A DNA stretch of 63,885 nt, filler included, from Olpidium bornovanus S191 (taxonomy: Eukaryota; Fungi; Olpidiomycota), in assembly GCA_017911155.1 (NCBI GenBank). It is 31 parts of 31 records of this genome, joined end to end, with 100 filler letters (N's around TTAATTAATTAA, not from the genome) between each part and the next. Parts side by side here need not be neighbours in the genome. Positions count along the whole stretch, not along the records: positions 18,075 to 20,846 come from JAEFCI010006407.1; 30 more parts are not named here. One strand, written 5' to 3'. This document shows, one piece after another, positions 18,075 to 20,946 of this stretch. Both the position numbers and the translations under genes were made by a program. The notes beneath the pieces were generated by a model, which was not told where the DNA came from, searched no databases, and saw only the letters and a program-made list of their open reading frames with translations. Numbering within the stretch: the stretch's first letter is position 1; the number at the start of each line of letters is the position of its first letter.

Positions 18075-20645
18075 AACCCGTGCGAACCGCCGGGCGGGCC
18101 GCACCAACCCCCCCCCCCCCCCCCCCCCCCCTCCCCCCCCCCCCCCCCCCTTCCCACCTCTCGCCTTCGAATTTTCGACGGGCGCGGCGTGGGCGGCGAA
18201 TGCTGGGCTGCGAGCAGGAGGGCCGCCCGGCCGGCGCTCGGCCGGAAAATCCGGCCCGTCCGTCGCCCACCGGCGCGATCGAGCGCCGGCTGCACCGGCT
18301 GCTGTTCGGCGTCGTCGCCGCCGCCGCCGTAGGTCCGTTTCGGCGCCCGTTCACAAAGGACGGAAAAAAAAAAAAAAAAAGCGCGCTCGGTTCCAGAAAT
18401 GCTCAAAAAAAAAGGCGGCGTCCCAAACGCAGCGCTGCAGGCGTACCGTCAGCACGCCTCCGGGATTCGCGTGCACAGCGTCGACGTTCGGCAGGCGAGC
18501 GTCGCCGCAGACGAAGGTTGGATCGAGGCAAAAAGGCTTTCCGCCGTCCGTCCGTCTTTTCTTGGTGTTTTTTTTTTTTCTTTTTCTGGAAGAGCGCGTG
18601 AGGGGAGAAGGTGGAGAGGAAACGGGTTTTCTGATGAAAGAAGGCGGGGTCGCAACGACTCGGTTGCCAGGCAGCCGCGAGGACGACGGGTTTGAGCACT
18701 TGGACCGGAATTTCATCGCGAGCGGTACGGCCCCGTCCCCGTTGTCGCCCGGGCTTGCGGAACGGCGCCGCCGGCCGGCGCGTCTGCGCAGACGCGGCTT
18801 GAGATTTTTCGTTCTCCGTTTTTTTCAGGTCCGGATGTCTACTTCGCTTGGATGTCCCCGGCGGAGGCGTTCGGGCCGCGGGAGTTCCGGGTGTTCGAGA
18901 GCTACCTGTACCACCACCCGGACGCCCGGGCGACGGTGTTCGCGAAGCACCTTCCGCCCGGGCATTTCCGGCGCTACGCGGACGCCGGGTACGACGTCCG
19001 GCTGCGGCGGGTCGACTCCGCGCTGCTGCGGAGGCTGGGCGAGGACGGCGGGTGCCGGCCCGGGCTCCGGGCCGAAGGCGGCGCGGGGCGGGACTCGGAC
19101 GCCCGGGCCGCGGCGTTCATCCGCTTCTGCATGCTGCACAGCCGCGGCGGCTTCCTCGGCGACTTCGACACGGTCTTGATCCGGCCGCTGCGCCGGTGGC
19201 CGGGCGCCGCCGGGTCGGTCGTCGCCCTGGCGCGGCGGCCGCCGGGCGACCGCTGCGGCTGGTGCCTGCCCGGCGGCAACTCGCACCTGACGGCGTCGCT
19301 GGCCGGGTCCGGGCGAGGCTCGGCGCTGAGCGGGAACGCCATGCGCCTCGTCGCCCTGGGCCCGGGCCCAGACCCTGGGGACCGGCCGCCTGGCGGTGCA
19401 GACGCCGTGGCCGCGGCGGCCCTGACGCGCGCCTACGCGCAGGATCCCAGGAACGTGACGGTCTGCGCGCGGCTGGTCGCGCAGCTCCCGCCCGCCGGAG
19501 ATCCGGGCCCGCGCGGTCATCCCGATCTCGAGCGGGTGAGGCGGACGTACCGCGCGCTCCGCCTTCCCGGCGGCCGGACGACGCCGGAAGCGGAAGCGGA
19601 AGCGGAAGCGGACCCGGAGCAGGGGGCGGCCGCGGAAGAGGCGCTGAGGGCTTTCGCCGTGCTCGCGGACGGCGGCGGCGGCGGCGGACCGGCGGCGGGC
19701 TCGGACGCCGCCGCGTCCGGCCGGATCAGAGGACCGGAATATCTCGGGGTGAACAAGCGGTTTTCCCTCGTCGGCGGGATCCGGCTGGTCCCTCCGCGGG
19801 AGCCCGAGCCGGGCCCGGCGGTGCTGAAATACAAGGTCACCGCGGTGGCGAAGCGCGGCCGGCTCCGCCTGCTGCAGGACCCGGAGCCGGCGTCGCGGAT
19901 GCTGACGTTCGAGGGCCCGTCGCCGCGGCACGTCAACCGGCAGCTGGCCGCGCTCGCCTACCGCGCGGGCGAGGGCGGCAGCGACTGCGTCCGCGTCGAA
20001 GCCTTCGCCGAGCTGCCCGGCGCCGTCCGGTCCCTCGGGACGCTCAGAACGAAGCTGTACCACGTGCAGGAGCTGGCGACCGTCGTCGTCCGCACCGCGG
20101 GTCGGATGGACAGGGTGTTCAGCGTCGCGGGCCGCGTGCAGGAACACTACCCGGGCGTGCGGGTCGTCGCGGCCGACTTTTCGCCGCCGGAACCGGCGGG
20201 CGCGGCGCGGCGGCTGCGGAACGGCCTGGTGCACCTGCCGCTGCCTCCGCGGCCGCCCGCCGCCGCCGCAAAGCTCCTGATGGCCGTGGTCGAGACGGAA
20301 TACGTGCTGTTCGTGAGCGACGCCGACGTCTCCATGGACGCGCGGGGCGACGTGCCCCGGCTGCTCCACGAGCTGGAGGCGCGCGGGCTAGACGCCGTGG
20401 CGGCCTGGTACGAGCGGACCGCCGGGAGCGGCGTCGGAGCCGGCGATCCGGACCCGCCGGACGGAGCCGAGCCCGACTTCTTCCTCGCCGGGGCCGCGCG
20501 CATGCGCGCGTTGGAGTACGCGGACGGCCGCGCCGCGTCGCAGGGACGGCGCCGTTACCCGCTGCAGCCGGCCGACGTCCTCGCCCAAGCGGAAGAGAAC
20601 GGTTGGAAGATAGGGAAAAGCCGCCTGCGCCCGTTTCTGGCCTAG
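18075..20645 (+). CDS. Two-domain glycosyltransferase: GT32-like (DXD) plus B4GALNT/GT12-like (GT-A), 5'-partial
   Basis: Main exon 18829-20645. N-terminal part: YFAW..FRVFESYLYHHPDARATVF..AFIRFCMLHSRGGFLGDFD. C-terminal part: [49 protein letters not shown] and RLLHELEARGLDAV. Confidence 0.8.
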
Positions 20646-20771
20646 CTCCTCGTTGGGTCCAGAGAGCGACGTGGTTTTTTTTTTCTCTCTCTTTCGTTTT
20701 TTTCTCCGTTTGCCGTTCTGGAAAAACGGCCCCCCTTCCCCTCCCAAATTCCGTCAGCCGTCGAGGTCAGC

Positions 20772-20836
<65 letters not shown>

Positions 20837-20946
20837 ACCCCCCAGCNNNNNNNNNNNNNNNNNNNNNNNNNNNNNNNNNNNNNNNNNNNNTTAATTAATT
20901 AANNNNNNNNNNNNNNNNNNNNNNNNNNNNNNNNNNNNNNNNNNNN

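What the first reader, a model, noticed from the sequence alone, without database searches (positions are those of the whole stretch)
18075..20645. Fungal glycosyltransferase fusing a GT32-like domain to an animal B4GALNT1 (GT12)-like module
Seen: one exon (18829-20645) encodes an N-terminal GT32-type domain (ES...HHP, IRF..L..RGGFLGDFD with DXD at 19161-19169). The second half matches my recollection of vertebrate GM2/GD2 synthase B4GALNT1 in motif order: YKVTAVAKRG~[30 protein letters not shown]~[46 protein letters not shown]~[40 protein letters not shown]~VTTKYVLWVDDDF, RLLHELEARGLDAV~RLVDVLERTPLDLV. Knowledge: GT32 enzymes (A4GALT, Och1/Sur1 types) and GT12 enzymes extend glycolipids or glycans, and GT12 is mainly known from animals. 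Inference: a bifunctional enzyme building an unusual HexNAc-containing glycolipid or wall glycan in a basal fungus, a fusion I do not recognise from described families.
Basis: partly seen in the sequence, partly recalled or inferred. Interest (0 to 1): 0.8.

Follow-up and report, generated by a model that had tools for sequence, protein, structure and literature searches.

The report
Degenerate fungal GT32–GT12 fusion glycosyltransferase
This Olpidium gene does join an A4GALT-like (GT32) domain to a B4GALNT1-like (GT12) module, but the fusion is a family shared by many zoosporic fungi, and the Olpidium copy is a fast-evolving, shortened member that has probably lost catalysis.

Summary
The piece is a whole 2772-bp Olpidium bornovanus contig with one gene, annotated as the 725-aa protein BJ554DRAFT_8336. 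Its main exon, 18829-20645, encodes a GT32-like domain (DFD at 19161-19169) followed by a B4GALNT1-like module. That module has both the non-catalytic "lower" domain and the GT-A domain.

The fusion is not unique. About 40 relatives carry it, including at least 15 named Chytridiomycota and Paramicrosporidium. Several are auto-named "Beta-1,4 N-acetylgalactosaminyltransferase 1/2". The family profile hits human B4GALNT1 at E 1.3e-46, while ordinary GT2 enzymes reach only about 1e-6. An intact relative superposes on B4GALNT1 residues 140-533 (Z 26).

The Olpidium copy is the outlier:
- It keeps 36 of 95 family-conserved positions; most relatives keep 85-100%.
- Its end branch is 5.8 against a median of 0.78.
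- Ala, Gly, Arg and Pro make up 49% of its residues.
- It stops at about B4GALNT1 residue 480, so it lacks the His483, Tyr501 and Arg505 equivalents.
- It has lost the GT32 Asp and Tyr of the D-x-x-R...Y-x-D-x-D motif.

Contigs from runs whose library type the tool could only guess as RNA show that it is spliced. They correct two annotated introns and run through the stop codon. It is most likely a decaying gene or a pseudoenzyme, not a working bifunctional enzyme. Interest is moderate to low.

The parts
18200..18545 (+). Putative first coding exon. It starts at ATG 18200 and has a weak hydrophobic, signal-anchor-like stretch at about 18290-18340, followed by a very basic stretch that includes an A17 run.
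   Evidence: With the two contig-supported splices, the main frame is open back to ATG 18200 without the annotated intron 1. Kyte-Doolittle mean is 1.57 over LHRLLFGVVAAAAVGPF; full-length chytrid relatives have a clearer membrane helix upstream of the GT32 domain. A contig of run X1 reads 18405-18545. The start codon and this exon are inferred, not shown.
18546..18670 (+). Intron (GT..AG). It differs from the annotated intron 18555-18675.
   Evidence: Record 1 of run X1 joins 18545 to 18671 (table 8; only 30 letters on one side). The ends were read.
18671..18724 (+). Short coding exon.
   Evidence: It is in frame with both neighbours after splicing. Contigs cover it.
18725..18828 (+). Intron (GT..AG). 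It replaces the annotated intron 18784-18830 and removes about 19 annotated residues.
   Evidence: Joint 18723/4 to 18828/9 in runs X1 and X2, at depths 14 and 7. Unspliced contigs are also present.
18829..20645 (+). Main exon, carrying both glycosyltransferase modules and the TAG stop at 20643-20645.
   Evidence: ORF. Contigs 18828-20207 and 20178-20684 overlap and run through the stop with no differing letters in that stretch. GC1/2/3 are 0.79/0.57/0.91.
18831..19697 (+). GT32-like retaining GT-A domain of A4GALT/Och1 type (P0001 residues 122-410).
   Evidence: Och1 9n3s at E 0.005. Relatives carry PF04488 and PF04572 here. VIA Z 16.1 to YeGT over model 12-262. A4GALT residues 72-352 match at TM 0.52 by the hit.
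19161..19169 (+). DFD, the DXD motif of the GT32-like domain, retained.
   Evidence: Sequence. It aligns to the Och1 DMD and to the family's invariant DFD.
19560..19718 (+). Low-complexity linker between the modules, with a (CGGAAG)4.7 Glu-Ala repeat at 19585-19612 and a GCG/Gly run at 19665-19698.
   Evidence: TRF. pLDDT is below 50 at model residues 294-307. Spurious depth peaks and joints occur here.
19719..20063 (+). Counterpart of the non-catalytic 'lower' domain of B4GALNT1 (P0001 residues about 418-532).
   Evidence: The family profile aligns to B4GALNT1 from chain position 128, which is residue 162. VIA aligns model 301-611 with B4GALNT1 135-478. Domain limits of B4GALNT1 are from PMC12217166.
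20064..20642 (+). Shortened GT12-like GT-A domain (P0001 residues 533-725). It ends at about the B4GALNT1 residue 480 equivalent.
   Evidence: phmmer to 9h6j at E 2.2e-5. Pfam FKRP_N at 27.5 bits. VIA ranges contrast with an intact relative that aligns to residue 533. No similarity to relatives after 20402 in any frame.
20316..20327 (+). SDAD, in place of the family's near-invariant DDD (B4GALNT1 D356-D358).
   Evidence: Alignments; conserved-column table.

Best explanation
The gene encodes a probable type II membrane protein. It is a highly diverged, C-terminally shortened member of a family conserved in zoosporic fungi (Chytridiomycota, Paramicrosporidium, Olpidium).

The family joins two modules. 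The first is a retaining GT32 domain of the A4GALT/Och1 kind. The second is a complete B4GALNT1-type (GT12) module, made of the non-catalytic lower domain plus an inverting GT-A domain. In chytrids, fibronectin-III domains often follow.

By inference, intact members add two sugars in succession in the secretory pathway: an alpha-linked hexose by the GT32 half and a beta-1,4-linked HexNAc by the GT12 half. The product would be either a two-step cap or an alternating polymer.

The Olpidium copy is still transcribed and spliced, and it is predicted to keep both folds and both Asp-x-Asp triplets. However, under extreme GC pressure and relaxed constraint it has replaced most family-invariant residues. 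It has also lost the 3' end that encodes the His483, Tyr501 and Arg505 equivalents.

I therefore read it as catalytically dead in the GT12 half (probability about 0.75) and probably impaired in the GT32 half (about 0.6). That makes it either a decaying gene or a pseudoenzyme kept for a non-catalytic role.

Shown: architecture, family membership, degeneracy, truncation and splicing. Inferred: topology, donor and acceptor chemistry, and loss of activity.
For: Family and fusion:
- HMMER over 1.8 billion representatives gave 109 hits, of which about 45 cover both halves.
- The hits carry PF04488, PF04572 and PF00535, with or without fn3.
- Named members are chytrids and Paramicrosporidium.

GT12 identity:
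- The family profile hits B4GALNT1 at E 1.3e-46; the next hit, a GT2 enzyme, is at 1.4e-6.
- The intact relative P0003 (model pLDDT 91) aligns with B4GALNT1 140-533 at Z 26.4, against Z 18.6 for the next fold.
- The Olpidium model (pLDDT 82.9) has B4GALNT1 as its top Foldseek hit at E 2e-17.

Degeneracy:
- 36 of 95 conserved positions are kept; most relatives keep 85-100%.
- Lost motifs are the TD of TDxxRF, the Y of GGxYxDxD, SLHL, DxGLSAGRN, LKLGEHE, and Asn to Asp at the N437 equivalent.
- The end branch is 5.76 against a median of 0.78, and the amino-acid make-up is aberrant.
- Ala+Gly+Arg+Pro is 49%, against 20-29% in relatives.

Truncation:
- The VIA alignment ends at B4GALNT1 residues 478-480.
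- No homology in any frame after 20402, and GC falls after the stop.
- Contigs from two studies read through the stop with no differing letters there.

Functional weight of the lost residues:
- B4GALNT1 R505H has under 2% activity, and K284, R288, D356, D358, R457, Y501 and R505 bind UDP-GalNAc (PMC12217166).
- TcdB Asp270 and Tyr284 are essential for UDP-glucose binding (PMC4690124). I equate these with the lost Asp and Tyr through the shared D-x-x-R...Y-x-D-x-D motif, which is an inference.
Against: - Both DXD-like triplets survive, as do R219, the GG pair, C-x-W-C, R546 (the R288 equivalent) and an Asp at the family HED position.
- GC3 of 0.91 shows a strong coding signature.
- The gene is transcribed and spliced, and AlphaFold models both domains confidently. 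That confidence leans on the relatives' alignment.
- Olpidium proteins may be generally fast-evolving, so divergence alone does not prove loss of function.
- The contig ends 200 bp after the stop, and the 3' end was not mapped. A further exon beyond an unrecognised intron cannot be excluded.
- No constraint test (dN/dS) was possible; only two polymorphisms were seen, both nonsynonymous.
Confidence: 0.72

Rival explanations
1. One reading: this copy is a working bifunctional enzyme. Both domains are active and build a HexNAc-containing glycolipid or wall or zoospore glycan, with the divergence reflecting altered specificity.
For: Both Asp-x-Asp triplets are retained. Both folds are predicted with high confidence. 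The gene is expressed and spliced. The coding periodicity is strong.
Against: - About 60% of family-invariant positions are lost, including donor-binding residues in both halves.
- There is no counterpart of B4GALNT1 481-533, the stretch that holds His483, Tyr501 and Arg505.
- R505H alone inactivates B4GALNT1.
Confidence: 0.13
2. The truncation is only apparent. The rest of the GT12 domain, and perhaps fn3 domains, lies in exons beyond the end of this 2772-bp contig, after an intron that starts near the apparent stop. The true protein would then be full-length, though still very diverged.
For: - The contig ends about 200 bp after the stop, in an A65 run.
- The sequence after the stop is T-rich and lower in GC, like the two confirmed introns.
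- Unspliced contigs coexist with spliced ones at the confirmed intron, so read-through contigs do not prove an exon.
Against: - The listed tables show no joint or loose end near 20600-20684, although 40 loose ends were not shown.
- Contigs of depth 12-20 run through the stop.
- No donor resembling the two confirmed ones (GTACGG, GTCCGT) sits just before the stop.
- Even if this were true, the upstream motif losses remain.
Confidence: 0.12
3. The contig is not from Olpidium, or the GT12-like part came from an animal by horizontal transfer or contamination of the non-axenic sample.
For: The assembly was binned from non-axenic zoospores grown on cucumber roots (PMC7865070). GT12 is best known from animals.
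Against: - The nearest relatives are all zoosporic fungi carrying the same two-module order.
- Within the chytrids the tree forms a well-supported clade, consistent with vertical descent.
- The gene has spliceosomal introns, and it recurs in runs from three studies under one organism label.
- Identity to human B4GALNT1 is only about 25%.
Confidence: 0.03

Closest known systems
Human B4GALNT1 (GM2/GD2 synthase, CAZy GT12; PDB 9h6j/9h6k/9h6l)
   Same: Both have a non-catalytic lower domain followed by an inverting GT-A domain. Shared motifs are the VKT-x-GR (K284/R288) region, the DDD region, the PN-F-ART strand and the H-E-D-FF helix. The family profile scores E 1.3e-46, and an intact relative superposes on residues 140-533 at Z 26.4 with 27% identity.
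   Different: The fungal proteins carry a GT32 domain in front and often fn3 domains behind. The R457 position is not conserved in the family. The Olpidium copy has K284 changed to Arg, SDAD in place of DDD, N437 changed to Asp and the GLSAGRN loop lost, and it ends at about residue 480 without His483, Tyr501 or Arg505. Acceptor and donor are unknown.
GT32 enzymes: lactosylceramide 4-alpha-galactosyltransferase A4GALT and yeast Och1 (PDB 9n3s)
   Same: The N-terminal domain has the retaining GT-A fold. Relatives match Pfam Gly_transf_sug plus Gb3_synth. The R-F-x-x-L...GG...D-x-D core is shared. A4GALT residues 72-352 align at TM 0.52 by the hit.
   Different: The Olpidium domain scores below the Pfam cut-off (15.7 against 23 bits). 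It has Ala for the Asp of D-x-x-R, Leu for the Tyr before DXD, and no detectable Gb3_synth region.
Two-domain bifunctional glycosyltransferases that pair a retaining with an inverting GT-A (LARGE1, chondroitin synthases CHSY/CHPF, PmHS2)
   Same: They have two GT-A domains in one type II polypeptide. These are the next-best whole-length structural matches (Foldseek E 1e-11 to 1e-6; VIA Z about 14 over model 9-611).
   Different: The CAZy families differ (GT8+GT49, GT31+GT7, GT2+GT45). Sequence identity is only 9-12% and the domain packing superposes poorly (rmsd above 20 A). Polymerase activity is only a hypothesis for the fungal family and is unlikely for the Olpidium copy.
FKRP stem domain (Pfam FKRP_N; PDB 6kal and others)
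   Same: It is a GT-A-like domain without glycosyltransferase motifs that serves oligomerisation and acceptor recognition (PMC6965139). It is the best Pfam match of the Olpidium C-terminal domain (27.5 bits), with VIA Z 13.6 and 23% identity over FKRP 48-239.
   Different: In FKRP the domain precedes a nucleotidyltransferase-fold catalytic domain. The Olpidium domain still has an Asp-x-Asp triplet. No evidence here shows a scaffold role.

Membership tests
CAZy GT12 (B4GALNT1/2 type) | Significant sequence similarity to B4GALNT1 across the lower and catalytic domains, better than to generic GT2 enzymes | tested here: met
   Olpidium alone reaches E 2.2e-5, over the N-half of the catalytic domain only. 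The family profile reaches E 1.3e-46 over chain positions 128-452, against 1.4e-6 for the best GT2.
CAZy GT12 (B4GALNT1/2 type) | Two-domain lumenal fold: non-catalytic lower domain plus GT-A domain | tested here: met
   VIA aligns model 301-611 with B4GALNT1 135-478 at Z 14.8 and 25% identity. B4GALNT1/2 are the top Swiss-Prot model hits.
CAZy GT12 (B4GALNT1/2 type) | DxD (D356, D358) binding UDP and Mn | tested here: inconclusive
   Olpidium has S-D-A-D where the 45 relatives have D-D-D. Two Asp remain, but with a changed first position and a one-residue insertion.
CAZy GT12 (B4GALNT1/2 type) | UDP-GalNAc-binding residues K284 and R288 | tested here: inconclusive
   K284 is changed to Arg and R288 is kept. 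Residue roles are from PMC12217166.
CAZy GT12 (B4GALNT1/2 type) | GT12-specific N437, and the C-terminal His483 and lid residues Tyr501/Arg505 | tested here: not met
   The N437 equivalent is Asp. The protein ends at about residue 480, so the His, Tyr and Arg have no counterpart. Relatives keep N, H, Y and R.
CAZy GT12 (B4GALNT1/2 type) | Beta-1,4-GalNAc transferase activity | not testable with these tools
   Needs an enzyme assay.
CAZy GT32 (Pfam Gly_transf_sug PF04488, with or without Gb3_synth PF04572) | Pfam model matched above the gathering score | tested here: not met
   Olpidium scores 13.7-15.7 bits against a cut-off of 23, with no PF04572 hit. Relatives score 23-41 bits and also match PF04572.
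CAZy GT32 (Pfam Gly_transf_sug PF04488, with or without Gb3_synth PF04572) | Motif D-x-x-R...GG-x-Y-x-D-x-D | tested here: inconclusive
   R, GG and D-F-D are kept. The first Asp is Ala and the Tyr is Leu, shown both against solved Och1 and against the family.
CAZy GT32 (Pfam Gly_transf_sug PF04488, with or without Gb3_synth PF04572) | Retaining GT-A fold like A4GALT/Och1 and relatives | tested here: met
   VIA Z 16.1 to YeGT over model 12-262, and Z 13-14 to LgtC and UGGT. A4GALT matches at TM 0.52 by the hit.
Zoosporic-fungal GT32-GT12 fusion family (uncharacterised) | Same domain order, collinear homology over both halves | tested here: met
   A single HMMER stretch of query 114-639 matches P0002 184-704 at E 8e-47; about 45 hits cover both halves.
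Zoosporic-fungal GT32-GT12 fusion family (uncharacterised) | Retention of the family's roughly 100 conserved positions | tested here: not met
   38% are kept; most relatives keep 85-100%.
Bifunctional alternating-polymer glycosyltransferases (LARGE/CHSY/EXT-like, by analogy) | Two intact active sites, one retaining and one inverting | tested here: not met
   The architecture is analogous, but both Olpidium sites have lost conserved residues. Intact relatives could qualify; polymer formation was not tested.

The most novel reading that the evidence does not exclude
The conserved GT32-GT12(-fn3) proteins of zoosporic fungi may be dual-activity enzymes of the LARGE or chondroitin-synthase type. 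They would build an alternating alpha-hexose/beta-1,4-HexNAc glycan on the zoospore surface or on glycolipids. This would be an opisthokont-ancestral GT12 function that terrestrial fungi lost. [quoted passage not shown]
Probability: 0.15. Interest if true: 0.6.

Novelty: new variant of a known kind. Interest (0 to 1): 0.36.

Why it matters
GT12 is usually treated as an animal ganglioside and Sda-antigen family. These results place a complete B4GALNT1-type module, including its odd non-catalytic lower domain, in a vertically inherited family of early-diverging fungi, always fused behind an A4GALT-like GT32 domain. That points to an older, opisthokont-wide origin for GT12. It also points to an unstudied two-step glycan pathway in chytrids, a group that includes amphibian and algal pathogens.

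The Olpidium locus mainly shows that pathway eroding in the lineage nearest the flagellum-less fungi. It also gives two cautions for very GC-rich genomes. Three of the six frames are open or nearly open over more than 500 codons here, so a long open frame says little about constraint. Ab initio intron calls can also be wrong: two of the three annotated introns are contradicted by spliced contigs.

Tried and rejected
- Word-indexed protein searches with the Olpidium protein and with alignment A1 returned only the query itself, because its low-complexity words swamped the candidate list. The exhaustive HMMER search and a search seeded with relative P0003 were needed.
- tblastn of 16 relatives against all six frames of the piece looked for a frameshifted remainder of the GT12 domain after 20402 and found none. 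A simple frameshift or assembly error was therefore rejected.
- Two exact-pattern scans of metagenome contigs, meant to extend the 3' end, found nothing.
- Four literature searches for GT12 or B4GALNT in chytrids or zoosporic fungi found no description of the fusion.
- A profile of only the C-terminal part of the family still did not align the Tyr501/Arg505 lid to B4GALNT1 by sequence. The equivalence in intact relatives rests on the structural alignment to residue 533 and on motif resemblance.
- A processed pseudogene, suggested by the A65 run about 130 nt after the stop, was rejected because the locus has two spliced introns.
Full report
**What the piece is.** Positions 18075-20846 are one complete 2772-bp contig of the Olpidium bornovanus metagenome-assembled genome. 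They carry one annotated gene, whose product is a 725-aa "hypothetical protein BJ554DRAFT_8336" (P0001). GC is 73-80% across the coding part and falls to 57-66% in the flanks. The assembly came from non-axenic zoospores raised on cucumber roots and was binned by composition and by similarity to fungal proteins (PMC7865070).

**Check of the observation.** The long + strand frame is real: ORF 18852-20645, with similarity to relatives starting at 18831.
- For the Olpidium protein alone the statistics are modest:
  - phmmer against the PDB gives B4GALNT1 at E 2.2e-5 and Och1 (GT32) at E 0.005.
  - Pfam gives FKRP_N at 27.5 bits (cut-off 27), Gly_transf_sug at 15.7 bits (cut-off 23) and Glycos_transf_2 at 11.7 bits.

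**Gene structure and transcription.** Contigs from runs of three studies under one coded organism label hold up to 94% of the sampled words. The tool could only guess these runs' library type as RNA; their spliced joints show that RNA is in them. Laid on the piece, they show four things.
- A spliced joint 18724|18829 with GT..AG ends appears in two runs.
- A second joint 18545|18671 (GT..AG, one contig, 30 letters on one side) contradicts the annotated intron 18555-18675.
- Overlapping contigs 18828-20207 and 20178-20684 put both enzyme halves and the TAG stop at 20643-20645 on continuous contigs. They show no differing letters over the 3' stretch.
- Unspliced contigs are also present.

With these two splices the main frame is open back to the ATG at 18200 without the annotated first intron, giving a 738-residue product. 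That 5' part contains a weakly hydrophobic LHRLLFGVVAAAAVGPF stretch. Full-length chytrid relatives have a clear membrane helix in the corresponding place. The type II topology is therefore inferred, not shown.

Two variants occur in all three RNA-type runs, 18847 C>T and 19408 T>A. Both are nonsynonymous.

**The fusion is a family, not a one-off.** An exhaustive HMMER search of 1.8 billion cluster representatives gave 109 hits. About 45 of them match both halves in the same order; the best is a single stretch of query 114-639 at E 8e-47.
- These hits carry Gly_transf_sug, Gb3_synth and Glycos_transf_2, and several add fn3 domains.
- Named members are Quaeritorhiza, Blyttiomyces, two Phlyctochytrium species, Chytriomyces, Clydaea, Irineochytrium, Zopfochytrium, Entophlyctis, Obelidium, two Cladochytrium species, Chytridiales sp. 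JEL 0842, a Lobulomycetales MAG and Paramicrosporidium.
- Several are already auto-named "Beta-1,4 N-acetylgalactosaminyltransferase 1" or "2".
- I found no paper describing the fusion.

**Is the C-terminal module GT12 or ordinary GT2?** It is GT12.
- A profile of 46 family members hits B4GALNT1 at E 1.3e-46 over chain positions 128-452. That covers the non-catalytic lower domain and the catalytic domain. The next hits, generic GT2 enzymes, reach only about 1e-6.
- An AlphaFold model of the intact relative P0003 (pLDDT 91.3) superposes on B4GALNT1 residues 140-533 with Z 26.4 and 27% identity, well above the next fold (ppGalNAc-T2, Z 18.6).
- The Olpidium model (pLDDT 82.9, pTM 0.87) has B4GALNT1 and B4GALNT2 as its top hits in the PDB and in Swiss-Prot models.
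- The N-terminal domain matches retaining GT-A enzymes: YeGT at Z 16.1, and A4GALT at TM 0.52 by the hit.
- After B4GALNT1, the best whole-length matches are the two-domain polymerases (CHSY3-CHPF, LARGE1, PmHS2). These have poor superposition and 9-12% identity.

**The Olpidium copy is the degenerate one.**
- At the roughly 100 alignment columns where relatives agree at 85% or more, Olpidium keeps 36 of 95. Most relatives keep 85-100%, and the next-lowest keeps 58%.
- GT32 half, lost: the Asp of T-D-x-x-R-F is now Ala and the Tyr before DXD is now Leu. Both changes also show in the direct alignment to solved Och1. The YLAPG, FN-VGP and SLHL motifs are gone as well.
- GT32 half, kept: R-F, GG, D-F-D and C-x-W-C.
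- GT12 half:
  - K284 is changed to Arg and R288 is kept.
  - The D-x-GLSAGRN loop is replaced by a Pro/Ala run.
  - DDD has become S-D-A-D.
  - The N437 equivalent is Asp.
  - LKLGEHE is gone, apart from one Asp.
- The chain ends at about B4GALNT1 residue 480. The VIA alignment stops at 478-480, whereas the intact relative reaches 533.
- The missing part holds His483 and the 486-510 lid with Tyr501 and Arg505. In the human enzyme R505H leaves under 2% activity, the same as the dead D358A mutant (PMC12217166).
- The lost GT32 Asp and Tyr correspond, through the shared motif, to TcdB Asp270 and Tyr284, which are listed as essential for UDP-glucose binding (PMC4690124). That equivalence is my inference from the motif, not a structural test made here.

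**How the truncation arose.** No frame after 20402 resembles any relative, and GC drops after the stop. The 3' coding part therefore seems to have been deleted or replaced, not merely cut short by a point nonsense mutation.

The contig ends about 200 bp later in an A65 run. An unrecognised intron leading off the contig remains possible. I give that about 0.12.

**Rate and composition.**
- In a maximum-likelihood tree of 32 members, the Olpidium end branch is 5.76 changes per site against a median of 0.78. It falls outside the well-supported chytrid clade, and its make-up is flagged as aberrant.
- Ala+Gly+Arg+Pro is 49% of residues, against 20-29% in relatives. GC3 is 0.91.
- Over the main exon, two + frames have no stop and one - frame has a single stop. 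The open frame is therefore no evidence of constraint.

**Mechanism.** Intact family members have one retaining GT32 domain and one inverting GT12 domain behind a membrane anchor. This suggests two successive transfers in the secretory pathway: an alpha-linked hexose and a beta-1,4-HexNAc, by analogy with A4GALT and B4GALNT1. The product could be a disaccharide cap or an alternating polymer, as in LARGE or the chondroitin synthases. All of this is inference from homology.

For the Olpidium copy I conclude that the GT12 half is catalytically dead (about 0.75) and the GT32 half probably impaired (about 0.6). The gene is either decaying or kept as a pseudoenzyme. The FKRP stem domain is a documented precedent for a non-catalytic GT-A domain that serves oligomerisation and acceptor recognition (PMC6965139). 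It is also the best Pfam match of this domain.

**Verdict.** The claims of uniqueness and of bifunctional activity for this copy are not supported.
- The architecture is an uncharacterised variant built from two known CAZy families. It is widespread in zoosporic fungi and partly recognised by automatic annotation.
- Interest is moderate at the family level, for a pre-metazoan GT12 and a possible new glycan pathway in chytrids. It is low for this particular locus.

Noticed in passing
window 18301-18447: One contig (run X2) joins 18301 to 18447 with CT..AC ends, which is GT..AG on the minus strand. This may be a spliced antisense or divergent transcript over the gene's 5' region, or an assembly artefact. 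On the + strand it would break the reading frame.
   Followed up: partly
window 18332-18431, 18555-18675, 18784-18830: Two of the three introns in the deposited gene model are contradicted by spliced contigs. The real joints are 18545|18671 and 18724|18829. The third annotated intron is partly read through by a contig of run X1 that starts at 18405.
   Followed up: yes
window 18108-18150, 18364-18380, 18569-18587, 20773-20837: There are long homopolymer tracts: C43 near the contig start, A17 (which would encode a Lys run if exon 1 is unspliced), a T-rich run, and A65 about 130 nt after the stop codon. The contigs of the laid runs break at these tracts. The A65 run looks like a poly(A) tail, but the locus has introns, so it is not a processed copy.
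   Followed up: partly
window 18831-20642, all frames: In this 75-80% GC sequence, two + frames have no stop and one - frame has a single stop over about 600 codons. ORF lists alone would suggest several overlapping 'genes'.
   Followed up: yes
window 19585-19698: The inter-domain linker is built from a (CGGAAG) Glu-Ala repeat and a GCG/Gly run. These attract cross-mapping contigs, giving depth spikes and false joints to 18385 and 19403.
   Followed up: partly
P0148 (hit, not in the window): This 704-aa protein from a public run assembly (Logan) combines LicD (PF04991), Glyco_transf_25 (PF01755) and Glycos_transf_2. It is another multi-module glycosyltransferase, distantly related through the GT2-like part.
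   Followed up: no
(FKRP 46-290): The Pfam FKRP_N 'stem' model and the solved FKRP stem domain match the GT12-like domain of this family (23% identity for Olpidium). This hints that the FKRP stem is itself a decayed GT12-type domain.
   Followed up: partly
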